Shown here in pieces: positions 21,793 to 60,830 of a stretch of DNA of 64,000 nt. Numbering within the stretch: the first letter of the stretch is position 1; every line of letters starts with the position of its first letter. A program made the position numbers and the translations under genes. The notes beneath the pieces are model-generated. The model was not told where the DNA came from and did no database searches. It was given only the letters and a program-made list of their open reading frames with translations. Location: the IMG/VR virus record IMGVR_UViG_3300007770_001284, positions 62,001 to 126,000 of that record, one strand, 5' to 3'.

Positions 21793-21837
21793 TGTATGCT
21801 AAAACATCTTCTAAAATTCTAATATTATTTTGTTTAT

Positions 21838-23897: not shown

Positions 23898-23908
23898 ATG
23901 CATATCAC

Positions 23909-23935: not shown

Positions 23936-23938
23936 TAT

Positions 23939-26128: not shown

Positions 26129-26129
26129 C

Positions 26130-27290: not shown

Positions 27291-27603
27291 AACAGCACTA
27301 GTCTGTGGGCTTGTTTTAGCAACAGTTATTGCCATTATTGCAATTTCATTTGCTGTTAAATTTGCTTTACTAATCTTGCGAGTCGAAGATGCGCTTGAAG
27401 AGAGTTTAGATATTTTAGATGAGCGCTACACATCAATAACAGAGATTGTCGAAATACCATTGTTTTCAGACAGTCCACAGATCCGTCAGGTCCATACAGA
27501 CCTGGTGCGTTCTAGAGAAGCTATTCTTTTAATAGCCAACACTTTAACGGACGATTTTAGTCGTTTGAAGGACAATGAGGATGGCACGAAAGAAAATACG
27601 TAG
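27277..27603 (+). CDS. Hypothetical protein with an N-terminal transmembrane helix
   Basis: Hydrophobic residues ~7-34 followed by an acidic coiled-coil-like segment. Confidence 0.6.
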   Translation: MTTLETALVCGLVLATVIAIIAISFAVKFALLILRVEDALEESLDILDERYTSITEIVEIPLFSDSPQIRQVHTDLVRSREAILLIANTLTDDFSRLKDNEDGTKENT

Positions 27604-28306
27604 AAACCCCGGTAAGCCGAGGAACATGTATTTCAATAAAGATACTCAAGCATCGATTGAAGAATATCAGAACGAAGACGACTCAAAGAAAAGAGAGACA
27701 GTCTATAAAGAGAAGATCCTTCCGGCATTCGATCAATTAGCAGAGAGCTTGATTTTTGTTTACGGATTTAATTCTCCGTACGATGGGTTTCATGCGTTGA
27801 AGTCAGACTGCGTTACGTTCTTATACGAGACAATTCACAAATGGGATCCTGCTCGCGGCACAAAGGCTTTTTCTTATTTTAACGTTGTAGCAAAAAATTG
27901 GTTGATTATTCGTTGTCGAAATGCGAAAAAAGAAGACAGAAGACATGTTTCGATGTCCGATCTAACAACTATGTCGTCAAGAGATAAACATACTGTTGCA
28001 AACAGCAGTGTTGCTCCCTCCCCCCAGGAGATTATGGAATTGGGAGAGCTTCGTGACAATATAGTAAGGGTTATCGATGAAATTGACAAACGTATTACGA
28101 AAGAGAATGAAAAAATCTGTGTGCAGGCCATTCGAACAGTTTTTCAGAACATTGATAATTTGGACTTTTTAAACAAGCGTGCTATTTACGTTTATGTGAG
28201 GGAAATTTCGGGATTGACATCGAAGCAGCTTTCCGTTGCGATGTCGAAGATACGAAAGCATTACAAAGATATTGTGCATGATTCTCGAATCGTGGATTTG
28301 CTTTAA
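27581..28306 (+). CDS. Phage RNA polymerase sigma factor (T4 gp55-like late sigma)
   Basis: YF...I..Y N-terminus; region-2-like HKWDPARGTKAFSYFNVVAKN; HTH-like C-terminus (REISGLTSKQLS). Confidence 0.65.
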   Translation: MARKKIRRNPGKPRNMYFNKDTQASIEEYQNEDDSKKRETVYKEKILPAFDQLAESLIFVYGFNSPYDGFHALKSDCVTFLYETIHKWDPARGTKAFSYFNVVAKNWLIIRCRNAKKEDRRHVSMSDLTTMSSRDKHTVANSSVAPSPQEIMELGELRDNIVRVIDEIDKRITKENEKICVQAIRTVFQNIDNLDFLNKRAIYVYVREISGLTSKQLSVAMSKIRKHYKDIVHDSRIVDLL

Positions 28307-28312
28307 GGATGA

Positions 28313-28684
28313 ATGATGGGTGATAAAGTCGAAAAAAGCTTACAGGATCTAGAGCAAACAAAGAAGAAGATGAAAGACTTCGAGGGAGTCTTAAAAAAGA
28401 TAAAGCATGCTGATGAAAAGAAAAGAATACTCTGGAAAGAGATATATGACAACGCGTTAATAGATCGTCAGAATGCCCACATTTTATTTGTCGAGGCATA
28501 CACATGCATGACGCAAAGTGCATCAGAACATGTCAGTCTCGGTAGCACTTTGGCAAAATATTTAGAGCGCATGGGAAAGTCCAACGAGCAATTACTGAAA
28601 TTAGCAGATTTGATATCGAAGTCTGAAGCTGCACATAATGCAATAAATGCTGACGAATTATTTTCTCAAATACAGGATGAGTGA
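28313..28684 (+). CDS. Helical hypothetical protein (possible small terminase-like)
   Basis: All-alpha protein with EIYDN and KYLE...KSNEQLLKLA. The function is a guess from size and context. Confidence 0.35.
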   Translation: MMGDKVEKSLQDLEQTKKKMKDFEGVLKKIKHADEKKRILWKEIYDNALIDRQNAHILFVEAYTCMTQSASEHVSLGSTLAKYLERMGKSNEQLLKLADLISKSEAAHNAINADELFSQIQDE

Positions 28685-30432
28685 TGGCAAAGGGTTCGGG
28701 AACAGATGCAGTTGCAAAGATCAATAATCCCACCAGCGATGTCGGCGATGTCGTTGAAGAAGCTGGAACAGCAGGCCCGACGCAAGTACTGCAACGTGCA
28801 GTGGTCGTGGAAATCCTATATGATTTAGCTGCGTTTACTGAAGAAGAATTCACAGAGCTACAGGAGCTTGTGTCTACTCCAGATTTGCTGGCTTCTGCCC
28901 CTCGAAATTCTGTGATCGCTCGTTCTGTGACCGCGGGAGCAGACAAAAGAGCGACTGTAGAAACAGATGAAGAATCCAACGAGGAGAAGGGCACAGTAGG
29001 CATTCTGTGTTACCCATTTTTCCCTCCCCACCTGTGTTTCCCTATAAAGCCCGGGGAGCAGGTATGGGTGATTAACGATTCCCCTGATGTTACTGCGGGG
29101 GTGTCTTATTGGATGTGTAGGATTCCAGAGCCAGACCATATCGATGGTGTCAATTACACTCACGGAGATAGGAAGTTTGTCGGATCAACAGGTGAGAAGA
29201 GTTCCTCGGAAAAGTCCGCATCGGCTCAGGGCGAGGAGTTAGACGCAGACGCTGAGATTTTTGGCTTTCCAAACGGTCCCGGCACGGAAGACGCATTTTC
29301 TTTAAACACTGAGCTGGCATACGAAGAAATCGTTAACGCGTCGCTGTCGTATCTTTCATTTATTCCCGAGCCAGTTCCACGTTTTACGAAGCGCCCGGGA
29401 GATCTTGTTATTCAAGGCTCAAACAACGCTTTGATATGTCTTGGTCAAGATCGTGGATGGACCCACCCAGACAGCAGTGTTACACGTACAGATGCTGATG
29501 GTGCAGAAGCCTCTAACGCGACATTGGAAGATGGTGATACCACGCTGGATGCTTCGATAAGCACTGGCTGCATCGATATCGTTGCCGGACGCGGCCGTTA
29601 CGATTTCAGAGTCCTTGGCGGAAGTGTCGATGCGGAACCCGAGTTGACGGCTTCCAGGTCGGTTAAGAATGTTCCGCCCGAAGAAGGTGGCCGAGACGCG
29701 TATGATGAAACAAATAAAAATCCTGTTGGAGACGACACTGCCGACGTGAATCGGCTTGATACTCCAGCAGAGGGCGATCCCGATTTGGAGAACGACGCAG
29801 CGCGGCTGTACGTGGCGATGGCAATGCAGGTCGACAAAAGTTTCCACATCGATAAGGAGGGTGATACAATCCCATCTGCAATTGATGGTAACATAGCTCC
29901 CGCAGAAGATGAGTCTTCTATTGAGTTTCCTGCTGCTATTGTTGCAAAGTCTGATGAGATTCGTTTGATTGCCAGAAGAAAAGAGTCAGATGATCCCGTC
30001 TCTGGAGCCCCAGAGATAAATGGCAGTATAAGATTGATCAAGGAAGGTGATATCAGCGATGACGCATGCGCTATATACCTCTTACCTGATGGCACGATTC
30101 AGATCAGTGGAAAGCAGATATTGATAGGAAGAAAGTCAAGTGATCAGTCTGAACGTTCGTCTATCTACGCTATGGGAGATGGTGGAGACCCAATGGGTCC
30201 CAACGGCACTGAACCGTGGGTGAGGTTTTCTGATTTGAAGAAGTTGTTTACGCAGTTGTACGAAGCGTTAGATGATTTTTGTACGACGCTTCAATCCAAT
30301 CAATGCCCTCTTTGGGGGCCAAACCCTCAAGTTACAGCAGCCTCCACGCAGCTACAGGCACTACTTAAAATTCATAAAACAAGAACAGAAGATTTCGATC
30401 AGTTGGCGTCAACAAGAATTTGGGGAGAATAA
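28681..30432 (+). CDS. Baseplate central spike/hub protein (gp5/VgrG-like)
   Basis: OB-fold-like P..PGEQVWV, GDLVIQGSNNALICLG and a beta-rich C-terminus; precedes gp25/gp6-like genes. Confidence 0.6.
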   Translation: MMAKGSGTDAVAKINNPTSDVGDVVEEAGTAGPTQVLQRAVVVEILYDLAAFTEEEFTELQELVSTPDLLASAPRNSVIARSVTAGADKRATVETDEESNEEKGTVGILCYPFFPPHLCFPIKPGEQVWVINDSPDVTAGVSYWMCRIPEPDHIDGVNYTHGDRKFVGSTGEKSSSEKSASAQGEELDADAEIFGFPNGPGTEDAFSLNTELAYEEIVNASLSYLSFIPEPVPRFTKRPGDLVIQGSNNALICLGQDRGWTHPDSSVTRTDADGAEASNATLEDGDTTLDASISTGCIDIVAGRGRYDFRVLGGSVDAEPELTASRSVKNVPPEEGGRDAYDETNKNPVGDDTADVNRLDTPAEGDPDLENDAARLYVAMAMQVDKSFHIDKEGDTIPSAIDGNIAPAEDESSIEFPAAIVAKSDEIRLIARRKESDDPVSGAPEINGSIRLIKEGDISDDACAIYLLPDGTIQISGKQILIGRKSSDQSERSSIYAMGDGGDPMGPNGTEPWVRFSDLKKLFTQLYEALDDFCTTLQSNQCPLWGPNPQVTAASTQLQALLKIHKTRTEDFDQLASTRIWGE

Positions 30433-30435
30433 TGT

Positions 30436-31455: not shown

Positions 31456-31477
31456 CGTGGTGAATTTATAGAAGTTG

Positions 31478-31484
31478 ATAATTA
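31478..31484 (+). promoter_or_regulatory. Candidate late promoter ATAATTA
   Basis: ATANTTA recurs in intergenic gaps at 31478, 48869, 56360 and 59863. Confidence 0.5.
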
Positions 31485-31499
31485 ACCCCAGGTGGTTGT

Positions 31500-31997
31500 A
31501 TGGCGTTAACGAAATTAGGAGATAGACAAGTTTACTCTTTTAGGTCTGTTGGTGAACAAGCCGAGGCCCGGAAGCTTCGACAGAAAGAGCAAAAAAGGAA
31601 TATAGCTTTTGGGATTAAAACCCCCGTGGCGCTGTCGTCGGAGGGAACTGAGTTTATTAAAATGAATTATTCTATGGCTGATCAAGTTAGCGATAATTTT
31701 AAGAACTTAATCCTCACAAATCACGGTGAACGGTTGGGGTTTCCTGATTTCGGTGCGAACTTAATGGAGTTGTCGTTTGAGCTTCAAAGCGAAGATGGGC
31801 AAACTGAGGCGATAAATAGGATAAGTCGCGCCGTCGGTAAATACATGCCCTATGTGATTCCATCCACATTCGAACCCATTACTGAGTATTTTGACAACAA
31901 GAACGTCGCAAAAGTCGGTGTTAGAATCACTTATAGTGTTCCGAAGTTAAACGTCCAGAACAGGATTCTTGAAGTAATAATCTATAGCGCGAGTTGA
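31500..31997 (+). CDS. Baseplate wedge/sheath initiator (T4 gp25 / P2 gpW-like)
   Basis: Q...N.KNLILTNHGER...PDFGANL....FE and I..AV.KYMPYV. Confidence 0.9.
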   Translation: MALTKLGDRQVYSFRSVGEQAEARKLRQKEQKRNIAFGIKTPVALSSEGTEFIKMNYSMADQVSDNFKNLILTNHGERLGFPDFGANLMELSFELQSEDGQTEAINRISRAVGKYMPYVIPSTFEPITEYFDNKNVAKVGVRITYSVPKLNVQNRILEVIIYSAS

Positions 31998-33844: not shown

Positions 33845-33851
33845 TTTCAAC

Positions 33852-48842: not shown

Positions 48843-48868
48843 TACCGGCTACCACGTTGCTTTTCGTA

Positions 48869-48875
48869 ATATTTA
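48869..48875 (+). promoter_or_regulatory. Candidate late promoter ATATTTA
   Basis: Member of the ATANTTA set; ends 23 nt before ATG 48899. Confidence 0.5.
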
Positions 48876-48898
48876 GTGTTACGTAACGGGAATGTTGA

Positions 48899-51800
48899 AT
48901 GGCACGTGAATCAAGGACATCTTTAAATAAATCTGATTTTTTGGTCATAAGATCGAAAACTGACGATTCTATCTTAAAGATAGTTTCTCCCCAGCACTTC
49001 CAGATCGGGTTCGATGATAAGGAATTTCATCGGATTCTCGCTGTCCATGGTAATGTTGAGGCCACAACGGTGTACGCTCCATCATTGTCTGGTTCTTTAA
49101 CACGCCTTGCTGATGGTACTACGTATCTACGCGAAGGGAACAATGTAACGATTACAACTGGTTCAGACGGCGCTGTTACGATTGCCGCGGGTACAGGCGC
49201 GCTGGTCGGGACGCTGTCGGGAGTAGAGGCGGACGGAATTCAAGACTTTACTTATGACGGAAGCGGAAACGCATCAGTAAAGGTAGACTTATATGACCGC
49301 GGAGGAATTACATTCTCTTCAAGTGGTCTGGGTCTGAATCCAAATGATGTAGACTCAGAATTAGCTGTGACCCCCGCCTCCGGAGACTTGCTGTTCATCT
49401 ACGATCTTGATGACCCCACTGCACGCAATGTAAAAAAGGTTTCCGTCTCCAACTTAATGGCGGCAGGCGCCGGTGGCACTTTGGCGAATGCCATTACTTT
49501 TGGAGACGGAATTTATGATTCTGCTTCTGGCGCAAGCTCATATAATAATACTGCCGCGGCAACAATCGCAGTAGATCTTGCGACAAATTCTGGTTTAGAA
49601 TTTAGTTCAAATAAATTAAAAGCCGATCTGGATGGCTCAACGTTAAGTGTAAATTCGTCTGGACTAAGCGTTGCGTCAGTACCGAATGCTTTAACACATG
49701 GAACGGGAATATCATCATTTAGTTATGACGGCGGCACAGCTAGCGTGGCAGTCGGTATCGATACATCTACGGTTCCTCTTTTGGCAAGTAGCAATACATG
49801 GTCTGGAACAAATACATTTGGTACACTGTTGGGGAAGCATGATGAGGTGTCTTCTGGCGTTCCATATCTTGTGGGCGGTAGCAACGTTACAATTTCTTAT
49901 GATACCCCGACTTCTGGCCAGATAACAATCGCTGCTTCGCTTGGTGCCGGAGGAGATCTTACCGCCGGGTCAGGTATTGGCACTTTTACGTATAATGGCA
50001 CAGGTGCAGCAACAGTTGGATTAGACGCAACATCGTTGTCTTCTGCTGGTACAAGGTCTTCATCTCTATTTGTGTCTGACGGCGGGACTACAATAACAAA
50101 ATCTACTGTGGGTACGTTGGTTGACCTGGTTGACAGAACCGTGCTGATGGCCGCGGCTTCGAACGGCGGGATCAACCTGAACTTTCAAGGTGCTGAGCTA
50201 CCAACTTTATTTTCTATTGATTTAGATGGCAGTACCCTTTCGATCGGAAATAACGGGATATCTGTTGCAAATTTGCCGTATGCAATTTCTCAAGGAACAG
50301 GCATTGATACATTTTCGTTTGACGGCTCTTCTACCCAGACAGTTGCAATCGACACTGCAGTGGTTCCTCGAAAGGGTGTCGACAATACGTGGACAGGGAA
50401 AAATACGTTTGGTATATCAACAACAGCGGGCTTAACTGGCTCTCTACAAGAAGTGTCTTCTGGTGTACCATATCTTGCCTGCGGTACAGGTGTAAGCATC
50501 GTTACGTCATCGAACGGACAGATAGTCGTTTCAACAGATGGCACAGAAATTACTGGTGTTACCGCTGGCCAGGGATTGACAGGTGGCGGTGCTTCCGGCG
50601 ATGTAACCCTGGCGGTTGATCTTGCATCAACCGCAGGCCTAGAATTTAGCTCTGATAAATTAAGGGTCAAGCTTGACGGCAGCACAATCGATATGGGTTC
50701 TTCTGGTATAAGCGTGGCGAATGTTCCAAATTCTTTGGCTCAAGGAACAGGGATATCAACGTTCACTTATGATGGTGGGACTTCTGGTATTACTGTTGGT
50801 ATTGATAATTCTGTCGTCGCGACATTAACTGGGTCTCAATTTAGCGGACCTGTTGTCTTTAATGCTGGTTTGTCTGGGTCGTTGACGCGGCTTCCTGATG
50901 GTACGTCATATCTCCGGCAGGGTGATAACGTCACGATAACGACGGGGTCTTCTGGTGAGATTACAATTAGCGCAATCGCTGGTGGTGGTGGCGTCGCGGA
51001 TGGTAATGCACAATATCTTGTTTTGGCCGCGACTAGTTCTCTCGCGCAAGAGAGAGTTATTACAATGGGGACAGGCCTTGCATCTAGCGACGACGGTGCA
51101 GGTAATGCGTACACTCTACGAGTGAAAGATAGCGAGTTTGCTGCATTAACTGGCTCGATTTTTTCCGGTGATGTTGTTGCGCAAGCAGGACTTTCCGGGT
51201 CCTTACAAGCGCTGTCTGATGGCACGTCATACCTCCGCGAGGGCTCGAATATTGCAATAGCAAGTTCCTCAGCGGGATATGTCACAGTGTCTTCTACTGA
51301 TACAACATACACAGCTGGTTCCGGCCTGGATCTTTCGGGTACCGCATTTAGTGTCGATCTTAAGAGCGGATCTGGCTTAGTAATTGACTCTGCCGAGCTT
51401 TCAATTGATGATTCTGTTTTAGCGACGATTACTGGGTCTACTTTTACTGGTACCGTGACCGCCCCAGCTCTTTCGGGTTCGCTTACAAGACTACAAGACG
51501 GGACTTCCTATCTACGACCAGGTAATGCTAATGTTATCATAACCTCTGCCTCAGCTGGGTATATTTCAATATCATCTACTGACACAGACACAACATACAC
51601 TGCTGGCGATGGTCTAGATCTTTCAGGCACCGAATTCAGTGTCGATCTTAAGAGCAACTCTGGGTTGGTGATTGATTCAACAGAGCTCTCTATAGACGAT
51701 TCGATTATTGCAACGATCACTGGATCGACCTTCACAGGCACGGTTACTGCTCCAGCTCTTTCTGGTTCACTCACCAAACTACAAGATGGGACATCTTACC

Positions 51801-53737
51801 TGATCGCAGGAAGTAACGTGACCATTACTACTGGCTCCTCTGGAGCTGTGACAGTAGCTGCGTCCGGTGGAGAAATATCAGTTGTTTCCGGTTCTTCTAG
51901 CGTTTCAAGCATCAGCACTCTAAACTTATCTAAGCTTGGAGTTATAAGCGATCTGGGCGGTGGCGTCGTCGCAGTCACTGGGTCTATAGGAGATGCTGAA
52001 GACGGTTCATATTCTGATGGGTTATTCACCGATTTCAGTACTGTAACACCAGTTGGGACAGCGGTGGATAGGTTTAACGAGGTCTTGAAGGGGCTTGCAC
52101 CCTCCGCCGCCCCAGGTCTAGACGATATGAACTGTTCAGACTCTGGTACTTCGGCTGTCCTTTCCTTCGGATCATCGCAGTCAATTTCCGGTTATACAAA
52201 TGCACGACCTTCCACGTTGACGCCCACTGACAATCTTTCTGATATCGATATTAATGGAACGTTTAATTCAACTGCCGCAAGTAATGACTTACGGCGCGCT
52301 TGTTTCGGCGGCTCGACAGTGATCAACGGAACGCTGAACGCCGACGTGTCAGCAGATGGTGTAAATTACGCCGCTTATTCATTCGGCAACGGTAATCAGG
52401 GAACTTTGAAACTTTTTGTAAATGATAATTCCACTGCAATACACTCTGTAGATTTAAGTTCATTCGGGTCTGGGAATTCTTTGAACGGAAACGGGTCTGG
52501 GTTTAACCTTTCTGCAACCACGCCAGGCCATTTTAGCGATAGCAGCAATTTCGAAACTTTCCAACACCGGCAAGGTACATACACAATCACCGCCGCTGAT
52601 CAGCAGAGCGGGTGGAACTACGCGAGGGTGGTGCACACAATAGCAGGCGCAGATATAACATGCAACTATGTGGAGTGGGTGAACGATCCCGATTCCAATG
52701 CATTGTCTTCCGATAATTCTGCCATGGATTCGCTTTCCATGACAGGAACTAAAAATCTTTCGGGAGTGAAATATAACACTGGCGGAACCGCTGAATATAG
52801 GATCCGCGTCTTGAATGCGTATCGTAATGTATATTCTACATCTACAATATCTTTTAACGGCACAAATTGCTCAGTCTCGTCTCAAGCGTTTCCATCTATC
52901 AATCATGCAGGCGGCGAAGATGAAACGAAAATTCTGCATCTTACTGGATCAGCGACGATTACAGGCGATCCTATTTTAGATGGGTCGATTTCTGTAAGTA
53001 CTAATGTACCCGCACCGCTAAAATCGAATCTTTCCAGCGCCGGCTCACAGTCAATAAGCGGAATTTTGTTATACGATCTATCTGATACATCCACCGCCAC
53101 GTCTGAGACGTTCAGGGGTGAAAGTTATAGATTAATATCAGGTAGCTATAATACTCAAGCTAACGTTACCGCTGGAGGGAGTGCTTGGGATTCTACAACA
53201 AGCCTCGCCGGCGTTGATGGCTTGCTTTTTTATAATAGCCGACTTTACGCGCCGCCCCAAGGAGGAGATTCTGGAGATTTTAGAAACACTTCTGACGGCG
53301 GGTCAATAACAAACGGTCCAAGTAGCAATGTAAATTATAGCGGTATCACGTCAGGCACAAGAACGTTTTATAGATATTTTCAGAACACATCAGGGGGCTC
53401 AAAGACAGGTTTCGATCTTACTATCAACGGATCAGGAACTATCGCTTCTCAAGCGACTACATTGACAACGTCGAACCTTCACGTGTTGATTAAGCTTCCG
53501 ACCACAACTGCTGCCTTTGAAACTGGGTGGATGGATTTGGCAATCTCATTCGCGACGGGACAAACCTCCGACGGCGACGGCTGCTTAGATGGAAGCTTAG
53601 ACTCATCGCTCAATGCGACTAACACTGCGACCTTCGGAACACAGTCAGTAGGCAGTAATGAATATATAGTTGTGAAAATAGAGGCAGACGCTTCATCAAC
53701 TGGGTACATTTCTAGTATGAGCGTTTCGTGGAGCTAA
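48899..53737 (+). CDS. Repeat-rich fibre-like virion protein (1612 aa)
   Basis: Ser/Gly/Thr-rich, with 7 copies (2 degenerate) of LSGSLxxLxDGTSYLxxGxNVTI plus other repeats, and a unique ~600-aa C-terminus. Confidence 0.7.
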   Translation: MARESRTSLNKSDFLVIRSKTDDSILKIVSPQHFQIGFDDKEFHRILAVHGNVEATTVYAPSLSGSLTRLADGTTYLREGNNVTITTGSDGAVTIAAGTGALVGTLSGVEADGIQDFTYDGSGNASVKVDLYDRGGITFSSSGLGLNPNDVDSELAVTPASGDLLFIYDLDDPTARNVKKVSVSNLMAAGAGGTLANAITFGDGIYDSASGASSYNNTAAATIAVDLATNSGLEFSSNKLKADLDGSTLSVNSSGLSVASVPNALTHGTGISSFSYDGGTASVAVGIDTSTVPLLASSNTWSGTNTFGTLLGKHDEVSSGVPYLVGGSNVTISYDTPTSGQITIAASLGAGGDLTAGSGIGTFTYNGTGAATVGLDATSLSSAGTRSSSLFVSDGGTTITKSTVGTLVDLVDRTVLMAAASNGGINLNFQGAELPTLFSIDLDGSTLSIGNNGISVANLPYAISQGTGIDTFSFDGSSTQTVAIDTAVVPRKGVDNTWTGKNTFGISTTAGLTGSLQEVSSGVPYLACGTGVSIVTSSNGQIVVSTDGTEITGVTAGQGLTGGGASGDVTLAVDLASTAGLEFSSDKLRVKLDGSTIDMGSSGISVANVPNSLAQGTGISTFTYDGGTSGITVGIDNSVVATLTGSQFSGPVVFNAGLSGSLTRLPDGTSYLRQGDNVTITTGSSGEITISAIAGGGGVADGNAQYLVLAATSSLAQERVITMGTGLASSDDGAGNAYTLRVKDSEFAALTGSIFSGDVVAQAGLSGSLQALSDGTSYLREGSNIAIASSSAGYVTVSSTDTTYTAGSGLDLSGTAFSVDLKSGSGLVIDSAELSIDDSVLATITGSTFTGTVTAPALSGSLTRLQDGTSYLRPGNANVIITSASAGYISISSTDTDTTYTAGDGLDLSGTEFSVDLKSNSGLVIDSTELSIDDSIIATITGSTFTGTVTAPALSGSLTKLQDGTSYLIAGSNVTITTGSSGAVTVAASGGEISVVSGSSSVSSISTLNLSKLGVISDLGGGVVAVTGSIGDAEDGSYSDGLFTDFSTVTPVGTAVDRFNEVLKGLAPSAAPGLDDMNCSDSGTSAVLSFGSSQSISGYTNARPSTLTPTDNLSDIDINGTFNSTAASNDLRRACFGGSTVINGTLNADVSADGVNYAAYSFGNGNQGTLKLFVNDNSTAIHSVDLSSFGSGNSLNGNGSGFNLSATTPGHFSDSSNFETFQHRQGTYTITAADQQSGWNYARVVHTIAGADITCNYVEWVNDPDSNALSSDNSAMDSLSMTGTKNLSGVKYNTGGTAEYRIRVLNAYRNVYSTSTISFNGTNCSVSSQAFPSINHAGGEDETKILHLTGSATITGDPILDGSISVSTNVPAPLKSNLSSAGSQSISGILLYDLSDTSTATSETFRGESYRLISGSYNTQANVTAGGSAWDSTTSLAGVDGLLFYNSRLYAPPQGGDSGDFRNTSDGGSITNGPSSNVNYSGITSGTRTFYRYFQNTSGGSKTGFDLTINGSGTIASQATTLTTSNLHVLIKLPTTTAAFETGWMDLAISFATGQTSDGDGCLDGSLDSSLNATNTATFGTQSVGSNEYIVVKIEADASSTGYISSMSVSWS
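51293..51800 (+). repeat. Tandem intragenic duplication, 288-bp period
   Basis: gtgtcgatcttaagagc at 51351 and 51639; the peptide TYTAGxGLDLSGTxFSVDLKS...DGTSYL occurs twice. Confidence 0.85.
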
Positions 53738-53740
53738 CCT

Positions 53741-56104
53741 ATGGCGTATGATGCAAAAACTGAGCGCTTGATTTCGCTTAAGAAATTAGCGGGTAAAGCG
53801 CAGACATCAAACGATAAGGGTCTTTCTAACGAGGGACTGCCGTCAGGTATAACTACAACTTCTGAAAATATATTCGGAGAATCGGTCACTACCAGCCCAT
53901 CCAACACCGCGCTATATACAATCACGGGACAGGTGGAATACCTCAGATTTCCCGCAACGTTTATTGCCGGTAGCGATACATCGGATGGTCGACACGGATT
54001 TGAATTAAAGCTTCCATCTGATTATGAATCCAATTCATCGAATTCAAAGGCGGGTACGTACCCGTTCCAGAATGATCAAGTCATTAATATAACGTCTGGA
54101 TCGTTACAACTTATACCTCCATCTTTTGCGTCATCATACGAGGCAAAGCCGTATTACGGTGGTAATTCGTCCAAGGGATCAGGTACACTAATTCCGCTAC
54201 TGGACGCTCGAGATTGGTATCTAGATTATTTTAACGGAGTGTTCTTCCAGCAGGACCCATCTGGAACTGGAGACCAGGCGGATAATCCTGACTTTATTGA
54301 GGGCTATCTGTATATTGGTGATATGCTGGACACTGTTGTCGCGTCAGCTGGCGGTGCAGGAGATGGTGATCCTGCTGCACAATATCTTGTTTTGGCCGCC
54401 ACCGCATCGCTATCGAATGAGCGTGTGTTTACAGCAGGAACAGGAATAAAGACTACTGATTCTGGTGCCGGTGCTGCCTATACGATCGCAGTTAGAGATT
54501 CAATTGTCGCAACTTTAACTGGTTCAACATTTTCAGGAACAGTTTCTGCTCCCGCATTGTCCGGTTCATTAACGAATCTGCAGGATGGTACTAGCTACTT
54601 GATTGCTGGAAGTAATACGACAATAGTGACAGGTTCTTCAGGAGCCATTACAATTTCATCGACTGGAGGTATTGATGGTTCTGGAGCAGCAAACAGAATT
54701 GCGACCTGGTCAGATTCAGATACGCTAACATCTGATGCTGACTTTACGTGGAACGGGTCTCTTTTAGATGTCCAGGGTGACGTAAATCTTAACGGAACTG
54801 TGGTGGTAAACCAGAGCGGAGTCGATAAAAACTTTAGGGTAGAAACCCAAAATAAAAGTAGCGCCTTGCAGGTAGACGGTGAAACAGACCAAGTACTTCT
54901 ATTTTCCGGAAGTCTTTCTGATGCTTCTGGTCACGGCTCGTCAGCAGCAGACCCTGACCCAAGAACGTTCACTGACACTAATTTCTTCGTGTCTGGATCT
55001 ATCGATTCTCGAAATACTTCAAGGAGAGGTACTTCTGTTTTCGGTGGTGATGTTGTAGTATCCGGAACGTTATCTGTCAACAGGGGTCAGGCGGGTGTTG
55101 GTAGCATGTTTACCGTTACATCAGATGGTAAAGTTGGCATTGGGTCTGATACTCCTTCTTATAAGCTTTCTGTTGGCGGAAATATGGACGTGGGAGAGTA
55201 CATCTACCACAAAAATGATGCCAACACTTTTATTCGGTTTCAGCCAGATGATATAAACATTCAAGCTGGTGGTGTCGATCTTATAAAAATGACAGAATCA
55301 GGTGCCAATACACAGATACTGATTTTATCTGGTGGCGGCACCTCAGATCCCAACCCCGCTAATTTTGGTGATACTAGTTTCTTTGTATCTGGAAGTATAG
55401 GGAGTATTGGGACATCAACAGGGGGTTCATCTGTTTTCGGTGGGGATGTACTTGCTTCTGGGTCTGTTGTAGCGTTGGCCGGCCTATCCGCGTCTTTACA
55501 ACAACTTAGCGATGGTACATCATATCTTCGGGAAGGGCCGAACGTTACTATAACATCAGCCTCTGATGGTTCAATAACTATTTCTTCGACAGGAGGCAGC
55601 GGTTCTCCCGGCGGAAGCAATACGCAGATTCAATTTAACGATAGTAACACTTTTGGTGGCGACAGCACATTCACGTTTAATAAGGTAACGAATACTTTAA
55701 GCGTGCCCGCATTGTCGGGTTCATTGACGCGGCTCGTTGACGGTACGTCGTATCTTCGGTCTGGTACTGGTATCTCTATAACCACCGGATCATCTGGTTA
55801 TGTTCAAGTTAGTAATACTGGGGTATCCGAAAGACAGAGACAGAGCTATTTTCTAGCACAATCGTATTCTGCCGGGGTGAATGTTCCAGTGTCATCGACA
55901 AATTTTGCGACGGTATCTTATGACATTGGTTTGATCGACGTTTTATTGAATGGACAGTTATTGCATTCTGGCACAGCAGCGCAGGTAACAGCAGATCCTG
56001 TGGAACGAGATTACTATGTGACTGGTGCATCATCATTAAAATTTGCGTTTGATATTGAAATTGATGATGTTCTCGATGTAATGGTATACAAGGTAGTAAG
56101 CTAG
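53741..56104 (+). CDS. Fibre-like virion protein (787 aa) sharing repeats with the 48899 protein
   Basis: Three DGTSYL repeats, two FFVSGSI...SVFGGDV repeats, GKVGIG and a C-terminal LNGQLL domain. Confidence 0.7.
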   Translation: MAYDAKTERLISLKKLAGKAQTSNDKGLSNEGLPSGITTTSENIFGESVTTSPSNTALYTITGQVEYLRFPATFIAGSDTSDGRHGFELKLPSDYESNSSNSKAGTYPFQNDQVINITSGSLQLIPPSFASSYEAKPYYGGNSSKGSGTLIPLLDARDWYLDYFNGVFFQQDPSGTGDQADNPDFIEGYLYIGDMLDTVVASAGGAGDGDPAAQYLVLAATASLSNERVFTAGTGIKTTDSGAGAAYTIAVRDSIVATLTGSTFSGTVSAPALSGSLTNLQDGTSYLIAGSNTTIVTGSSGAITISSTGGIDGSGAANRIATWSDSDTLTSDADFTWNGSLLDVQGDVNLNGTVVVNQSGVDKNFRVETQNKSSALQVDGETDQVLLFSGSLSDASGHGSSAADPDPRTFTDTNFFVSGSIDSRNTSRRGTSVFGGDVVVSGTLSVNRGQAGVGSMFTVTSDGKVGIGSDTPSYKLSVGGNMDVGEYIYHKNDANTFIRFQPDDINIQAGGVDLIKMTESGANTQILILSGGGTSDPNPANFGDTSFFVSGSIGSIGTSTGGSSVFGGDVLASGSVVALAGLSASLQQLSDGTSYLREGPNVTITSASDGSITISSTGGSGSPGGSNTQIQFNDSNTFGGDSTFTFNKVTNTLSVPALSGSLTRLVDGTSYLRSGTGISITTGSSGYVQVSNTGVSERQRQSYFLAQSYSAGVNVPVSSTNFATVSYDIGLIDVLLNGQLLHSGTAAQVTADPVERDYYVTGASSLKFAFDIEIDDVLDVMVYKVVS

Positions 56105-56127
56105 TGGACACCATAATTTAAATTAGT

Positions 56128-56346
56128 ATGCAAGACACATCTCAATATATTACCGCGGATATCGGATTAGCAGCGTTTCTTCTTTTGAAGGGGTGTGAGC
56201 TCCTCTCTGCGGGTCGAGAGAAAAACAGATATAAATTTGTGTTTAAAGACAATGTTGAGTGTACAAAGTACGCTGTTGGGTACATCAACAGTGATTATTC
56301 ACGCTTCGATGCGATACTAAAAAACTTGAAAAATCTCGTGCACTAA
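56128..56346 (+). CDS. Small protein resembling DUF5659
   Basis: Y.T.DI.LAAFL..KG..L.......KFVF pattern; 72 aa. Confidence 0.55.
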   Translation: MQDTSQYITADIGLAAFLLLKGCELLSAGREKNRYKFVFKDNVECTKYAVGYINSDYSRFDAILKNLKNLVH

Positions 56347-56359
56347 CGCTAAGACTTGT

Positions 56360-56476
56360 ATAGTTAGAGGCAAGTTCGTTCGTTTCCTATTAGTTTGTTT
56401 TCCCCGTATGTTTTTTACGTTGATTTCTTCGTTTATGTGTTTGTAGAACACTAATTTCGAAAAAGGAAAATAAATT
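56360..56476 (+). promoter_or_regulatory. Candidate late promoter ATAGTTA plus a ~110-nt U-rich structured 5' leader
   Basis: ATAGTTA at 56360-56366; tttcct/aggaaa and attagt/actaat are complementary. Confidence 0.45.
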
Positions 56477-59233
56477 ATGCCCCAAAAAACAAAAATGAGA
56501 TTGCTCCAGCTCTCTGGTGGACTCGCAAGCAACAATGCTGCTGCTTTTGAATTCGTCGATGGTTCTGGCGCATCTGATCAATCATATTTAAGATTTGATA
56601 CGGTATCAGGTCAATCAGAGTTTGGTGCTCCTGTCGTTATCGGTACCGATGGTGCCACTGCCGGTGATATCAAGCTCACCACAGACAATAACGGTGAGAT
56701 CATCTGGGAAGGCTCTTCCGCTGATGGTAACGAGAATAAGCTGCGCGCTGAAGACGGTGCTGGCGTAAACACGTTACCTGCATCGACAGGTACTATCCTG
56801 ACAACCGCCACCGCTGTTACAGTGGAACAAGGTGGTACAGGAGCAACATCGCTAACAGACGGTGGTATCCTACTTGGTAACGGCTCTGGCGCTATTCAGG
56901 CGATGAACGTTCTTTCCGATGGTGAGATGCTTGTTGGTGACGGTACGACTGACCCCGCCGTTGAAAGCGGAGCAACACTTCGCACAAGCATTGGTGTTGG
57001 TACTGGTGACAGTCCACAATTTACAGGTATTGAACTTGGTCATGCATCTGACACTACACTTACAAGGCAAGGTTCTGGCGATGTTAACATTGAAGGAAAC
57101 ATCATCTACCGTGCTGGTGGAACAGACGTTGCGATTGCTGATGGTGGAACCGGTGCTTCAACTGCCGCTGCTGCTGCAAGCGCTTTGGGTGTTGGAACTG
57201 AGGATAGCCCACAGTTTACTGGCTTGAATCTCGAGTCTTCTACCTCCAACTTGCCGCTGGCGATCCTGAAAAACACCAACTCCGACGCCTTAGGTGCTCG
57301 TCTTCGGTTTGTTAAAGATAAGGGCGCCGCAGGTGCTGATGGCGATGATGTTGGTAGCATTGAGTGGCTCGGTGATGATGCTGGTCAAAACGCGACCGCG
57401 TTTGGAAAAATTCTGGTAGAGGTCTCTGAGTCTGATGATACTGACGAAGCAGGTAAAATGTCATTGTTCGTCGCAGAAAGTAACGGGACAACGACAACTC
57501 TTACTGCTGGTCTGATACTAGAGGGTGAGCACGCAACAGATGGCCAGGTTGATGTAACAATCGGCGCTGGTTCTGCGTCTACAACGACAATTGTGGGCGA
57601 GGCAATTATTGCTGGTGATCTAACTGTTCAGGGAACGACAACTACAGTCAACCAGACGATTATCGAGAGTACAGTAGATGTCCTCGTGTTCGAAGGTGCT
57701 ACTGCCAATGCCCACGAGACTACGCTTAAGGTTGTTGAACCAACTGCTGATTGTTCTTTCGCATTGCCAACGCTGACTGCGGGTAACTACTTCATTCCAG
57801 CAATCACTGATACAGCTACTGATGCGTCTACGGCTGTTACTGCTGCGGAGTTTGCACTCCTCGACGGTGACTCAAATGTTGCAACTGTTACTGTTGCCGA
57901 CAACGACGGTGTGCTCTTCAACGACGCCGGCACAATGAAGCAGGTCACGGTACAGTCTCTTGCTGCATACTATGATGATGAGATAACAGCTATGCCAAAC
58001 CTTGTTACAATCGGTAAGGCTGCTGCTACAACAGATATCGCAGCTGGTGACCTCACCATGTACAATGCTGTAAACGATGGTAACCCCACAATCAGAGTAG
58101 GTAAAGATGCTGCTGACAGCCTCGGTATCGCAGTGAGCTACGCGTCAGGTGCTCAGACCCTTGAAAAGGTCGAGTTCTCCACCGCGTCGTCCACAGGTAA
58201 TGCTGACGACGGTAAATTTGTCTTTGATGTTGATGGGACAGATATTCTGTCCATCGGTGACGCAGGCGTCAGCATATCAGCAAGCATGGCTTACGCGGTA
58301 GCTGGCACTGCGATTCTGTCCGACAGTGGCGGCACAATGACGCTGTCAAATGTTGATGCTATTGACGCAACAACTGAAAGCACTATTGAAGCTGCGATTG
58401 ATTCCCTCGTTGAACTTACTACAATCGGTAAGGCTGCTGCTACAACCAACATTGCCGCTGGCGATGTTACGATGTACAATGCTGTAAATGATGGTAATCC
58501 TTCGATCAGAGTAGGTAAAGATGCTGCTGACAGCCTTGGCATAACAGTGAGCTACGCGTCAGGTGCTCAGACCCTTGAAAAGGTCGAGTTTGCCACCGCG
58601 TCGTCCACAGCTAATGCTGACGACGGTAGGTTCATCTTCGATGTCGACGGTACTGATATAGTCACAATCGGTGATGCTGGGCTAGAGCTCAAGGACGACG
58701 CCACGATTGGGAGCCTCTCGGACCATGACTTGTTAACTCTTGGGAATGCCATTCTCACTGTTGCGGGTGAAGTATCTATGACTACGCTCGATATCGGCGG
58801 GACAAACGTGACTGCAACCGCTACAGAGCTTAGTTTGCTGGACGGTGATGTTGGCAATGACGCTTCGATAACGATTGCCGACACTGATGGAATCCTTGTC
58901 GACGACGGCGGGGCAATGAAGAAGGTACCTGCTAGCGATCTTAAGACTTTCATCGGTTCCGGTCAAACCACAAAAGGCTACACCGAAGTCGGTACGGCCG
59001 TTGCTGCCGACGCTAACGTGTCTGTGCCTACGATCAATGCAGCCTCTTGGGGACAAGCTGATATATCCGCCGCTACTGATAGAGAGATATACCTGAACGG
59101 TCAGCTCTTGATGCCTGGAGCTTCTGCTGCATCAAACAAGGACTGGTATAACGAGGGTACAACTAATGGCATCGTCCGATTCGAGTTTGGTCTTGAAGTC
59201 GGTGATGTTTTGACATTCGTTCTTAGATCTTAA
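56477..59233 (+). CDS. Tail/head fibre-like protein (918 aa) with internal duplications
   Basis: GGTGA repeats, GDLTVQGTTTTVN fibre motif and a C-terminal YLNGQLL...GDVLTF domain. Confidence 0.7.
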   Translation: MPQKTKMRLLQLSGGLASNNAAAFEFVDGSGASDQSYLRFDTVSGQSEFGAPVVIGTDGATAGDIKLTTDNNGEIIWEGSSADGNENKLRAEDGAGVNTLPASTGTILTTATAVTVEQGGTGATSLTDGGILLGNGSGAIQAMNVLSDGEMLVGDGTTDPAVESGATLRTSIGVGTGDSPQFTGIELGHASDTTLTRQGSGDVNIEGNIIYRAGGTDVAIADGGTGASTAAAAASALGVGTEDSPQFTGLNLESSTSNLPLAILKNTNSDALGARLRFVKDKGAAGADGDDVGSIEWLGDDAGQNATAFGKILVEVSESDDTDEAGKMSLFVAESNGTTTTLTAGLILEGEHATDGQVDVTIGAGSASTTTIVGEAIIAGDLTVQGTTTTVNQTIIESTVDVLVFEGATANAHETTLKVVEPTADCSFALPTLTAGNYFIPAITDTATDASTAVTAAEFALLDGDSNVATVTVADNDGVLFNDAGTMKQVTVQSLAAYYDDEITAMPNLVTIGKAAATTDIAAGDLTMYNAVNDGNPTIRVGKDAADSLGIAVSYASGAQTLEKVEFSTASSTGNADDGKFVFDVDGTDILSIGDAGVSISASMAYAVAGTAILSDSGGTMTLSNVDAIDATTESTIEAAIDSLVELTTIGKAAATTNIAAGDVTMYNAVNDGNPSIRVGKDAADSLGITVSYASGAQTLEKVEFATASSTANADDGRFIFDVDGTDIVTIGDAGLELKDDATIGSLSDHDLLTLGNAILTVAGEVSMTTLDIGGTNVTATATELSLLDGDVGNDASITIADTDGILVDDGGAMKKVPASDLKTFIGSGQTTKGYTEVGTAVAADANVSVPTINAASWGQADISAATDREIYLNGQLLMPGASAASNKDWYNEGTTNGIVRFEFGLEVGDVLTFVLRS
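58006..58680 (+). repeat. Intragenic direct repeat, ~260-bp units with a 414-bp period
   Basis: acaatcggtaaggctgctgctacaac at 58007 and 58421; 46-bp identical block at 58131-58176 and 58545-58590. Confidence 0.92.
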
Positions 59234-59262
59234 GAAACAAGCTGAAATCAGCTTTTATGTCT

Positions 59263-59297
59263 GGGGGGACCTTTCGAGGTCCCCCCTTTTTATTTTT
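59263..59297 (+). terminator. Rho-independent terminator
   Basis: Perfect 10-bp stem ggggggacct-TTCG-aggtcccccc followed by tttttattttt. Confidence 0.95.
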
Positions 59298-59315
59298 ACC
59301 CTTCGAACATTAAGT

Positions 59316-59335
59316 TATAATATTCCACTGGGAGG
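59316..59335 (+). promoter_or_regulatory. Sigma70-like -10 (TATAAT) and SD (GGAGG) for the 59342 gene
   Basis: TATAAT at 59316-59321 just after the terminator; GGAGG at 59331-59335. Confidence 0.5.
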
Positions 59336-59341
59336 TAATTT

Positions 59342-59863
59342 ATGGAAGATGATTTCGCCGCCGTGATCAAGGGAAAATTGGTTGATGTTCAAGAAAGAAT
59401 AAAAAATCAAAATACTAAAGTACTGAATCCACAGTATCACTCTCGAAGGCTAACAGAGGTGCTACAGGAGGCAGTAGAAAATATTGACGTTAATGATGGA
59501 GAGCAGAAGGTTGTTGAGCAGCTTGTAGCAATTCTGAACAGAGCTCCCGGGTATGTTGCAGGTGGGTTCACAGACGCGTTACAGCAAGTAGCTTATTTAA
59601 AGCAAGAATTAGGTGTGTGGGTTTCCGTTAATACAGAGTGGCAAAATTTTGAATCTCGTATTCTGGAAGACAAGAATAGAAAAGAAGAATTGAAAGCAGC
59701 AATTGCTTCTGGTGCGATTGAAGAACGAAGTAGCAGCACTAAGCGAGAAGTCGGTGCACACCCAGGTCCGACTACAGCCGTGATTCGAGAAGCGAAAGCT
59801 GAGATAAAAGCTGAGCTTGAGGAGGCAGAGCGAAAAGCTGAGCTTGAGGAATCTGGTAGCTAA
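59342..59863 (+). CDS. Hypothetical coiled-coil protein
   Basis: Strong SD; helical and E/K-rich; C-terminal KAELEE duplicated. Confidence 0.7.
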   Translation: MEDDFAAVIKGKLVDVQERIKNQNTKVLNPQYHSRRLTEVLQEAVENIDVNDGEQKVVEQLVAILNRAPGYVAGGFTDALQQVAYLKQELGVWVSVNTEWQNFESRILEDKNRKEELKAAIASGAIEERSSSTKREVGAHPGPTTAVIREAKAEIKAELEEAERKAELEESGS

Positions 59864-59869
59864 TACTTA
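59863..59869 (+). promoter_or_regulatory. Candidate late promoter ATACTTA
   Basis: Member of the ATANTTA set; ends 5 nt before ATG 59875. Confidence 0.45.
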
Positions 59870-59874
59870 GATGC

Positions 59875-60822: not shown

Positions 60823-60830
60823 GTTGATAG

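What the first reader, a model, noticed from the sequence alone, without database searches (positions are those of the whole stretch)
27581..59869. Candidate late promoter ATANTTA paired with a gp55-like sigma
Seen: ATAATTA (31478), ATATTTA (48869), ATAGTTA (56360) and ATACTTA (59863) lie in four of the six main intergenic gaps of the structural region, with all four bases at N. A variant ATAATTTA is at 56113, and the sixth gap has TATAAT instead. Known: T4 gp55 reads a -10-only element (TATAAATA). Inference: this is the cognate promoter of the 27581 sigma. At 59863 it ends 5 nt before the ATG, implying a leaderless mRNA.
Basis: partly seen in the sequence, partly recalled or inferred. Interest (0 to 1): 0.6.

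Follow-up and report, generated by a model that had tools for sequence, protein, structure and literature searches.

The report
Late promoter ATANTTA of marine jumbo phages
A seven-base signal, ATANTTA, in front of the tail and baseplate genes of an uncultured 255-kb marine phage is very probably its late promoter, read by a distant relative of the phage T4 late sigma factor gp55, giving this phage group a T4-style late switch with a different promoter sequence.

Summary
The window is part of a 254,743-bp phage record. Of all 4096 XXXNXXX patterns, ATANTTA has the largest share of + strand copies in intergenic DNA (30 of 68; intergenic DNA is 4.5% of the genome). Fully intergenic copies number 26, against 7.9±2.7 in shuffles. 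Its reverse complement is the most depleted of 4062 patterns inside genes (15 against 68). It is kept before orthologous genes in 74 of 80 diverged relatives, and precedes tail sheath, tail tube and gp25-like genes. No -35 element accompanies it.

The 27575 ORF has a sigma region-2 domain of gp55 type (phrog_234 in 16 of 20 family members, best E 3.5e-8; Z 10.6 to T4 gp55), plus a C-terminal domain of unclear kinship. No phage RNA polymerase was found.

The pairing is inferred, not shown. Two cultured phages with this sigma and no canonical sigma carry the same core before structural genes. T4 instead shows ATANATA.

A spike of ATANTTA-N5-ATG and a purine six bases after the motif support the leaderless reading at 59863. 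ATAATTTA at 56113 is not a class member. No transcript 5' ends could be mapped. This is a new variant of a known kind.

The parts
27575..28306 (+). Residues ~18-144 form a sigma region-2 domain. Residues ~147-243 form a helical domain of unclear kinship.
   Evidence: phrog_234 'late sigma transcription factor' E 0.005 / 1e-4; 16 of 20 family members hit it, best E 3.5e-8. AF2 model pLDDT 76. VIA-align gives T4 gp55 chain 7d7d_F Z 10.6, rmsd 3.3, 121 of 137 residues aligned, and the other top rows are sigma domain-2 structures. Weak Sigma70_r2 hit of 11.8 bits, like T4 gp55's 14.5 bits.
28313..28684 (+). Small gene (123 aa) directly after the sigma gene; a possible partner of the sigma (speculative).
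   Evidence: A homologue sits in the same position after the sigma homologue in Flavobacterium phage immuto (BLASTP E 2e-5). The immuto and Mel-JY01 copies match each other at E 1e-26. No Pfam or PHROG family.
31478..31484 (+). ATAATTA, late promoter element 15 nt before the gp25-like baseplate wedge gene (31500-31997).
   Evidence: Downstream gene: PF04965 / phrog_43. ATANTTA is present in the last ~85 nt before the orthologue in 74 of 80 related loci although the flanks have diverged, and in G1 and G3.
48869..48875 (+). ATATTTA, late promoter element 23 nt before the 1612-aa gene (48899-53737).
   Evidence: The motif is also present before the orthologues in G1 (ATAATTA) and G3 (ATATTTA).
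56360..56366 (+). ATAGTTA, late promoter element 110 nt before the 918-aa gene (56477-59233). The predicted leader begins near 56372.
   Evidence: The gene is followed by the strongest terminator-like hairpin of the region. Two RNA-Seq metatranscriptomes hold five small contigs, with no differing letters, inside this gene only; this is weak evidence.
59863..59869 (+). ATACTTA overlapping the stop codon of the previous gene, 5 nt before the ATG at 59875. Predicted promoter of a leaderless mRNA.
   Evidence: The same motif and 5-nt spacer stand before the G1 orthologue (56% identity); G3 has the motif with a 19-nt leader. N5-ATG spike; purine at the sixth base after the motif.
56113..56120 (+). 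ATAATTTA 'variant' 7 nt before the DUF5659 gene; not supported as a member of the class.
   Evidence: ATANNTTA has 72 genome copies with only 6 intergenic. Single-mismatch variants are not enriched.
56128..56346 (+).
   Evidence: PF18903, E 5.2e-10, 39.5 bits, cut-off 23.6.
59316..59321 (+). TATAAT (within TATAATAT) 20 nt before the 59342 gene; a different, TATAAT-type promoter class.
   Evidence: TATAATAT has 6 of its 10 genome copies in intergenic DNA.
59263..59286 (+). Intrinsic-terminator-like hairpin (10 pairs, 8 G-C, T run) ending the 56477-59233 transcription unit.

Best explanation
ATANTTA is the -10-type, stand-alone late promoter element of this phage lineage. The phage has no RNA polymerase of its own, so the host core enzyme transcribes it. 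The 243-aa protein encoded at 27575-28306 replaces the host sigma. Its gp55-like region-2 domain recognises ATANTTA, placed like positions -12 to -6 of the T4 late promoter. Transcription then starts at the sixth base after the motif, usually a purine. Most late genes get a 10-40-nt leader with a Shine-Dalgarno sequence. A subset, including the gene at 59875, has exactly 5 nt between motif and ATG and is made as leaderless mRNA.

Shown here: the motif's statistics, its conservation, its position before late-type genes, the lack of a -35 element, the sigma fold, and the absence of a detectable phage polymerase. Inferred: that the motif is a transcription start signal, that this sigma reads it, and where the start site lies.
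For: Motif statistics
- Ranks first of 4096 patterns for intergenic share. Ranks first by both measures in a strand-aware rerun in G0, G1 and G3.
- z about 6.8, 11.0 and 7.7 against dinucleotide shuffles in G0, G1 and G3.
- Antisense copies inside genes are the most depleted of 4062 patterns against synonymous-codon shuffles (15 vs 67.5). Sense copies are 36 vs 65.
- All six specified positions are needed.

Anatomy
- No other conserved position from -45 to +30.
- The exception is purine at the sixth base after the motif (81 of 105 sites).
- N5-ATG spike: 12 cases in three genomes.
- In T4, TATAAATA spans -13 to -6 (PMC2988020).

Conservation
- 74 of 80 loci before the gp25-like gene.
- Orthologues of three window genes in G1 and G3.

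Gene class
- Precedes tail sheath, tail tube, an adaptor-like gene and the gp25-like gene.

Sigma
-.
- No RNAP beta or beta' and no T7-type polymerase in G0; no beta' in G1-G4 either, one of them a complete genome.

Pairing
- Phages immuto and Mel-JY01 have the sigma homologue and no canonical Sigma70_r2 gene.
- They carry [AC]TATTTA / ATATTTA before genes of their structural regions.
- The T4 control shows ATANATA (z 4.6) and not ATANTTA (z 0.6).
- The sigma gene itself is not preceded by ATANTTA.
Against: - No 5' end of any transcript was mapped. The RNA runs gave only a few short contigs.
- Sequence similarity of the window protein itself to gp55 is weak: phrog_234 E 0.005, and hhalign to the T4 gp55 sequence E 0.54.
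- The protein has a 97-residue C-terminal domain that gp55 lacks.
- No gp45-type clamp was found, so the T4 activation mechanism may not apply.
- A second, canonical phage sigma is conserved in G0-G4, so co-occurrence within this lineage does not separate the two sigmas.
- The immuto count is inflated by a 17-copy repeated cassette.
- Gene calls were my own longest-ORF heuristic, not a trained gene finder.
Confidence: 0.72

Rival explanations
1. ATANTTA is a promoter, but it is read by the phage's second, canonical sigma-70-family protein (genome 220496-221251, outside the window) or by a host sigma. On this reading the 27575 protein has another role.
For: The canonical sigma (Sigma70_r1_2, r2 and r3 domains; no r4 hit) is conserved in G0-G4. 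A sigma without an evident region 4 could also use -10-only promoters. ATANTTA is AT-rich like a -10 box.
Against: - Immuto and Mel-JY01 have no Sigma70_r2 gene at E <= 1, yet carry the same core before genes of their structural regions.
- Their hosts are a Flavobacterium and a Microcystis, so one shared host sigma specificity is unlikely (established knowledge of host promoter types).
- The genome has a separate TATAAT-type class and an early class GTGCAA-N17-TGGTACAAT that suit sigma-70-type readers better.
- Sigma-70-type -35/-10 pairs are at chance level in the structural region: 22 against 20.2.
Confidence: 0.15
2. ATANTTA acts at the RNA level in 5' leaders, as an operator for a translational repressor or an RNase processing site, and not as a promoter.
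For: It lies 5-40 nt before start codons in the sense direction, where such elements also lie.
Against: - An RNA element would not be selected against on the antisense strand. Antisense copies are the most depleted of all patterns in genes.
- The fixed N5-ATG class and the purine at the sixth base fit a start site.
- The motif often directly follows the previous gene's stop or a terminator, as at 59863 and genome 151809.
Confidence: 0.06
3. The pattern is a by-product of AT-rich intergenic DNA and rare codons, with no function.
For: Intergenic DNA is AT-richer than coding DNA. ATA and TTA could be rare codons.
Against: - Dinucleotide shuffles of the gaps give 7.9±2.65 against 26 observed, and the reverse complement is at expectation (8).
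- Synonymous-codon shuffles keep codon usage and still predict 65-69 copies per strand in genes.
- One-mismatch variants are not enriched.
- The motif is conserved in 74 of 80 diverged loci.
Confidence: 0.01

Closest known systems
Phage T4 late promoter TATAAATA read by gp55 (with gp33 and the gp45 sliding clamp)
   Same: - A single short AT-rich box about one helical turn before the start, with no -35 element.
- It precedes virion genes.
- The sigma has a region-2 domain matching gp55 (Z 10.6; phrog_234).
- Five of the seven motif positions equal T4 positions -12 to -6 (ATA.-.TA).
- The inferred start lies six bases after the box, as in T4.
   Different: - The consensus is ATANTTA: the fourth base is free, and T replaces A at the fifth. 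The T4 core ATANATA is not enriched here.
- The sigma is 243 aa with an extra 97-residue C-terminal domain.
- No gp45-type clamp was detected; gp33 was not searched.
- The phage is an uncultured ~255-290-kb lineage, not a T4-like phage. It also encodes a canonical sigma.
Late promoters of T4-like cyanophages and KVP40/Aeh1-type phages (variants of TATAAATA found in silico)
   Same: Variation of the late consensus alongside divergence of gp55 homologues is known in the T4 family (PMC2988020).
   Different: Those phages keep clear gp55, gp33 and gp45 orthologues and near-T4 consensus sequences. Here the sigma is only remotely related, and the consensus differs inside the core.
Flavobacterium phage vB_FspM_immuto and Microcystis phage Mel-JY01 (cultured phages with the sigma homologue, annotated 'hypothetical protein')
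   Same: - A sigma homologue at 27-28% identity.
- A related small gene directly downstream of it: significant to the window gene only for immuto (E 2e-5); the immuto and Mel-JY01 copies match each other at E 1e-26.
- [AC]TATTTA-TAA (immuto) or ATATTTA-TAT (Mel-JY01) before genes of their structural regions.
   Different: - Their motif is longer and fixes N as T.
- Immuto also has a 17-copy cassette, TATCAATAATTAAAAC, before small genes.
- No canonical second sigma.
- I found no published promoter analysis for them in the library.

Membership tests
T4-type late promoter (stand-alone -10-like box) | Single short AT-rich box with no conserved -35 or other upstream element | tested here: met
   Information content is <=0.35 bit at every position from -45 to -1 in 28 sites, and <=0.15 bit at the flanking positions tabulated for 105 sites of three genomes.
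T4-type late promoter (stand-alone -10-like box) | Consensus TATAAATA | tested here: not met
   The motif is ATANTTA. ATANATA lies in 4 of 130 upstream gaps in G0, with z 0.3 in G1 and -2.3 in G3. In T4 it gives z 4.6.
T4-type late promoter (stand-alone -10-like box) | Precedes late (virion) genes | tested here: met
   Found before the gp25-like baseplate wedge, tail sheath, tail tube and adaptor-like genes. Timing of expression was not measured.
T4-type late promoter (stand-alone -10-like box) | Transcription starts about six bases after the box | not testable with these tools
   Indirect only: purine at that base in 81 of 105 sites and the N5-ATG spike. The RNA runs gave no 5' ends.
gp55 late sigma family (phrog_234) | Sigma region-2-like domain homologous to gp55 | tested here: met
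   phrog_234 in 16 of 20 family members, best E 3.5e-8; the window protein itself scores E 0.005. 7d7d_F (gp55) Z 10.6, rmsd 3.3, 121 of 137 residues. hhalign to the single T4 sequence is colinear but not significant (E 0.54).
gp55 late sigma family (phrog_234) | No sigma domain 4 | tested here: inconclusive
   An extra C-terminal domain (residues 147-243) is present. Folded alone (pLDDT 81) it matches only generic helical hairpins (Z <= 7.2), with no sigma-4 among the top 50. No Pfam sigma-4 hit. Whole-length alignments to SigB and sigma-32 exist, but with rmsd above 20.
gp55 late sigma family (phrog_234) | Hydrophobic/acidic C-terminal clamp-binding tail | tested here: inconclusive
   The C-terminus ends D-[LI]-[LF] in most of the lineage, against SLDFLYEAND in T4. 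It is not kept in immuto or Mel-JY01. Binding was not tested.
gp55 late sigma family (phrog_234) | Works with a gp45 sliding clamp and gp33 co-activator | tested here: not met
   No match to PF09116 or to the T4 gp45 protein in the 254.7-kb record. The record is only about 75% complete, and neither gp33 nor DnaN-type clamps were searched, so this is weak.
Canonical sigma-70 family (Pfam Sigma70_r2/r3/r4) | Region 2 above the Pfam cut-off | tested here: not met
   11.8 bits against a cut-off of 24 for the 27575 ORF. The phage's other sigma scores 75-78 bits.
Leaderless mRNA | Primary 5' end at the A of the AUG start codon | not testable with these tools
   Only the geometry is available: a 5-nt spacer at 59863-59875, the same in the G1 orthologue, and 12 such genes in three genomes.

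The most novel reading that the evidence does not exclude
This widespread marine jumbo-phage lineage runs a gp55-type late switch without a T4-type sliding clamp. A two-domain late sigma, perhaps together with the conserved small protein encoded just downstream, suffices to read a six-base box. The box would be potent enough that antisense copies are the most strongly purged word in the genome. A fixed N5 spacing would be used to make a set of leaderless late mRNAs. The same sigma-promoter pair would reach phages of Bacteroidota and Cyanobacteria, making it an old late-transcription system that works in more than one host phylum.
Probability: 0.3. Interest if true: 0.75.

Novelty: new variant of a known kind. 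Interest (0 to 1): 0.6.

Why it matters
This gives a testable transcription map for a large, globally distributed but uncultured group of marine jumbo phages. The word search found 1891 proteins related to the sigma at E <= 0.001, on contigs up to 293 kb. Most of the group's genes have no annotation, and an ATANTTA box marks late genes and operon starts directly from sequence.

It extends the gp55 / -10-only late-promoter principle far outside the T4 family, with a changed consensus and a changed sigma architecture. It offers a natural series for studying how a minimal sigma reads a minimal promoter: T4 TATAAATA; this lineage ATANTTA; immuto [AC]TATTTATAA; Mel-JY01 ATATTTATAT.

The two cultured relatives make the prediction directly testable at the bench. 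The strong purge of antisense copies is also a clean genomic signature that could be used to find promoters in other uncultured phages.

Tried and rejected
- Megablast of 6 kb against the phage collection: no match.
- phmmer and a 20-sequence profile of the sigma against PDB sequences: nothing meaningful.
- Foldseek on the whole model: sigma factors dominate, but at E 0.03-1. VIA-align was needed to see it clearly.
- hhalign of the family profile against the single T4 gp55 sequence: colinear but E 0.54.
- The C-terminal domain folded alone: no specific match, so sigma-4 could be neither confirmed nor excluded.
- Related loci fetched with the 918-aa protein were mostly not orthologous, because they share only a mosaic domain (residues ~112-252). 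I replaced them with whole relatives G1 and G3.
- RNA evidence: four seawater metatranscriptome runs hold only short contigs of the 5.9-kb stretch.
- T4 gp45 and PF09116 searches of the genome: empty.
- ATAATTTA / ATANNTTA and all one-mismatch variants: not enriched, and rejected as class members.
- The large protein search (search of protein representatives), complex prediction and the atlas searches were not used. No claim here rests on absence of relatives or on binding.
- Whether the record belongs to the 'moraphage' lineage (PMC12619734) was not tested.


Full report
**1. What the window is**

The window is bases 62001-126000 of a single 254,743-bp virus record (IMG/VR type, linear, about 75% complete by CheckV) with 44% G+C. 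My longest-ORF gene calls give 278 genes, 247 of them on the + strand, covering 95.5% of the DNA. In the window every sizeable ORF is on the + strand and genes abut or overlap. The few gaps therefore stand out.

No close cultured relative exists. The word search found 1891 proteins related to the sigma at E <= 0.001, many of them from marine samples such as Tara. Related IMG/VR contigs reach 293 kb.

**2. The observation**

The four sites are exactly as described. They end 15, 23, 110 and 5 nt before the ATGs at 31500, 48899, 56477 and 59875. ATAATTTA (56113) and TATAAT (59316) are also there.

The 372-nt 'gap' is really two gaps around a 72-aa DUF5659 gene at 56128-56346.

**3. Is it more than chance?**

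Yes, by several independent tests.

- (a) The window has 11 copies on both strands where dinucleotide shuffles give 47.6±6.8.
- (b) Among all 4096 patterns of the form XXXNXXX, ATANTTA has the highest share of + strand copies touching intergenic DNA: 30 of 68, in 4.5% of the genome. It ties for the highest absolute intergenic count. The - strand has 8 of 23.
- (c) Fully intergenic + strand copies number 26, against 7.9±2.65 in 500 dinucleotide-preserving shuffles of the gaps (largest 18). The reverse complement is at expectation, with 8.
- (d) I shuffled synonymous codons within each gene, which keeps protein sequence and codon usage. Against that control, sense copies inside + strand genes are 36 versus 64.9±7.2. 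Antisense copies are 15 versus 68.7±7.0.
- (e) In a scan of 4062 patterns, the antisense form TAANTAT is the single most depleted word (ratio 0.22, z -8.7). The sense form ranks 56th. Selection against copies that would fire into genes from the wrong strand is what a DNA-level, directional signal predicts. An RNA element in leaders would not predict it.
- (f) None of the 18 one-mismatch variants, nor ATANNTTA, shows comparable enrichment. All six specified bases matter, and the 56113 'variant' is not a member.

**4. Anatomy**

In the 28 sites of this genome that lie within 120 nt of a + strand gene, no position from -45 to -1 carries more than 0.35 bit. N is T13, A5, C5, G5.

Pooling 105 such sites from three genomes, the only further signal is the sixth base after the motif: A42, G39, T19, C5.

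Spacing to the start codon falls into two groups. There is a broad group of 14-40 nt, mostly with GGAG-like ribosome sites. There is also a sharp group at 5 nt. Counting only ATGs that open ORFs of 60 or more codons, ATANTTA-N5-ATG occurs 3, 6 and 3 times in the three genomes, against 0-3 at any neighbouring spacing.

In T4 the late box TATAAATA occupies -13 to -6 (PMC2988020). Aligning ATANTTA with -12 to -6 puts +1 at the sixth base after it. That is the purine position, and it is the A of the ATG in the N5 class. A fourth is conservation of the 5-nt spacer before the G1 orthologue.

**5. Conservation**

Eighty IMG/VR loci around homologues of the sigma (47-100% identity) were fetched. In 74 of them ATANTTA lies within about 85 nt of the orthologue of the gp25-like gene. 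The surrounding intergenic sequence is otherwise diverged, and N varies.

Two whole relatives were retrieved:

- G1: 280,913 bp, sigma 70% identical.
- G3: 293,409 bp, terminal repeats, complete, sigma 51% identical.

In the + strand count, ATANTTA is first in G1 for intergenic share and for intergenic count. In G3 it is second by share and sixth by count. In a strand-aware version of the scan it is first in all three genomes by both measures. The z values are 11.0 (G1) and 7.7 (G3). The motif is present before the orthologues of the window genes at 31500, 48899 and 59875 in both relatives.

**6. Which genes carry it**

Outside the window the motif precedes the tail sheath (genome 155117), the tail tube (161419) and an adaptor-like gene (151830). 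Inside the window it precedes the gp25-like wedge gene. Most other downstream genes have no family hit.

The sigma gene itself is not behind an ATANTTA. It lies in a long run of overlapping genes. The nearest upstream gaps (21793-21837 and 23898-23938) carry TAATATT / TATAATAT boxes.

**7. The sigma**

The 243-aa product has no Pfam hit above threshold. It does hit PHROG 234, 'late sigma transcription factor', at E 0.005, or 1e-4 in the genome scan. Sixteen of 20 family members hit the same PHROG, best E 3.5e-8. Four of 20 touch Sigma70_r2 weakly.

Its conserved core (KWD..RGTKAFSYFNVVAKNWLI) matches the region 2 model at 11.8 bits. T4 gp55 matches the same model at 14.5 bits.

An AlphaFold model (pLDDT 76) aligns with T4 gp55 in the gp45-dependent activation complex: 7d7d_F, Z 10.6, rmsd 3.3, 121 of 137 residues, model residues 18-144. 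Nearly all other top matches are sigma domain-2 structures.

Residues 147-243 form a separate helical domain. Folded alone (pLDDT 81), it finds only generic helical hairpins. Sigma domain 4 is therefore neither shown nor excluded. Since the promoters have no -35 element, a DNA-reading domain 4 is not called for.

**8. Who reads the motif?**

No RNA polymerase beta', beta or T7-type enzyme is detectable in this record. No beta' is detectable in G1-G4. The T7-type search rang nowhere, so it proves little. The host core enzyme is therefore the likely polymerase.

The genome has a second sigma, a canonical one with regions 1.2, 2 and 3, at genome 220496-221251. It lies behind an early-type promoter, GTGCAA-N17-GGTGTATAAT, and is conserved in G1-G4. 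Within this lineage, co-occurrence cannot separate the two sigmas.

The wider comparison can. Flavobacterium phage immuto and Microcystis phage Mel-JY01 encode homologues of the 27575 protein at 27-28% identity. They have no Sigma70_r2 gene at E <= 1. ATANTTA is enriched in their sense upstream gaps, with z 9.9 and 4.7.

Inspection qualifies this. In immuto, 17 copies come from a repeated cassette before small genes at 67.6-73.9 kb. The sites in its structural region read [AC]TATTTA-TAA. In Mel-JY01 they read ATATTTA-TAT, about 35 nt before ATGs around the tail sheath gene. The shared core is TATTTA.

T4, run through the same pipeline as a control, returns its own ATANATA (27 of 158 copies in upstream gaps; z 4.6). 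It shows no signal for ATANTTA (z 0.6).

The three hosts differ: a Flavobacterium, a Microcystis, and an unknown host whose phage uses Shine-Dalgarno sites and TGnTAYAAT early promoters. A common host sigma is therefore an unlikely reader. I put the pairing at about 0.7-0.75.

**9. RNA data**

One search found four seawater metatranscriptome runs with small shares of a 5.9-kb stretch. Laid on 56000-61900, the two bona fide RNA-Seq runs hold five contigs with no differing letters, all inside the 918-aa gene. That fits a strongly expressed unit between the 56360 box and the 59263 terminator. Contigs cannot show starts, however, and DNA carry-over is not excluded. Adapter junctions occur at several positions, including 56378, and are not interpretable.

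**10. Comparison and novelty**

The system works like T4 late transcription: a minimal, -10-only box read by a region-2 sigma on host core polymerase. It differs in four respects:

- the consensus;
- the sigma's architecture;
- the lack of a detectable gp45-type clamp;
- the presence of a second phage sigma.

I found no description of this motif in the paper library. A 2025 paper on a lineage of large aquatic phages mentions a sigma factor but gives no promoter analysis (PMC12619734). I did not test whether this record belongs to that lineage.

I rate it a new variant of a known kind, of solid interest to phage transcription and marine virus genomics. The decisive experiment, 5'-end mapping in the cultured relatives or in vitro transcription, is still to be done.

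Noticed in passing
G000 genome 220496-221251 (outside the window; L192:496-1251): A second phage sigma of the canonical sigma-70 family (Sigma70_r1_2, r2, r3; no r4 hit; 251 aa). It is conserved in G1-G4 and preceded by GTGCAA-N17-GGTGTATAAT. With the gp55-like sigma this suggests a cascade of host sigma, then phage sigma, then late sigma.
   Followed up: partly
G000 genome 6715, 8629, 10091, 220424, 243840 (outside the window): An early-type promoter class with a -35-like GTGCAA, a 16-17-nt spacer and an extended -10 TGGTACAAT / TGTATAAT. It is confined to the two ends of the record.
   Followed up: partly
window 21820, 23915, 59316: A third box type, TAATATT / TATAATAT, stands before genes that lack ATANTTA. 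Two copies share a longer form, CTAAAATnCTAATATT (window 21810 and genome 176765). TATAATAT has 6 of its 10 genome copies in gaps.
   Followed up: partly
window 56128-56346: An unlisted 72-aa gene of family DUF5659 lies inside the apparent 372-nt gap.
   Followed up: yes
window 28313-28684: The 123-aa gene after the sigma gene has homologues in the same place in phages immuto and Mel-JY01, so sigma plus small gene form a conserved pair. It could be a co-factor; no fold or binding test was made.
   Followed up: partly
window 28289-28303 (C-terminus of the sigma): The sigma ends in a conserved D-[LI]-[LF] tail across most of the lineage. This recalls the hydrophobic/acidic clamp-binding tail of T4 gp55 (SLDFLYEAND). 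It is not conserved in immuto or Mel-JY01.
   Followed up: partly
window 56374-56387 and G000 genome 189046: The same 14-nt word, GTTCGTTCGTTTCC, begins 7 nt after two different ATANTTA boxes, at the very start of the predicted leaders. A shorter copy is at genome 151720. It is not kept in G1 or G3.
   Followed up: partly
window 56477-59233: The 918-aa protein has no family hit. Its residues ~112-252 recur in many otherwise unrelated IMG/VR contigs, which suggests a mobile or mosaic domain. The sequence also contains internal repeats.
   Followed up: no
L209 (phage immuto, record 67.6-73.9 kb): Seventeen consecutive small genes are each preceded by (G/A)TATCAATAATTAAAAC, mostly 14 nt before the ATG. 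This looks like a tandem family of promoter-gene cassettes.
   Followed up: no
window 24875-27290: Two family-4 glycosyltransferase genes lie directly upstream of the sigma operon segment. One also hits 'GT4 in conflict systems'.
   Followed up: no
window 40000-50000: G+C rises to 0.49-0.54 in the giant 2398-aa gene region, against 0.37-0.42 in the first 27 kb.
   Followed up: no
window 28558, 34644, 56584, 61491 (+) and 14602, 55575, 63822 (-): Seven ATANTTA copies lie inside genes. Whether any is an internal or antisense promoter is unknown. 28558 lies 116 nt before the start of the 583-aa gene at 28681.
   Followed up: no
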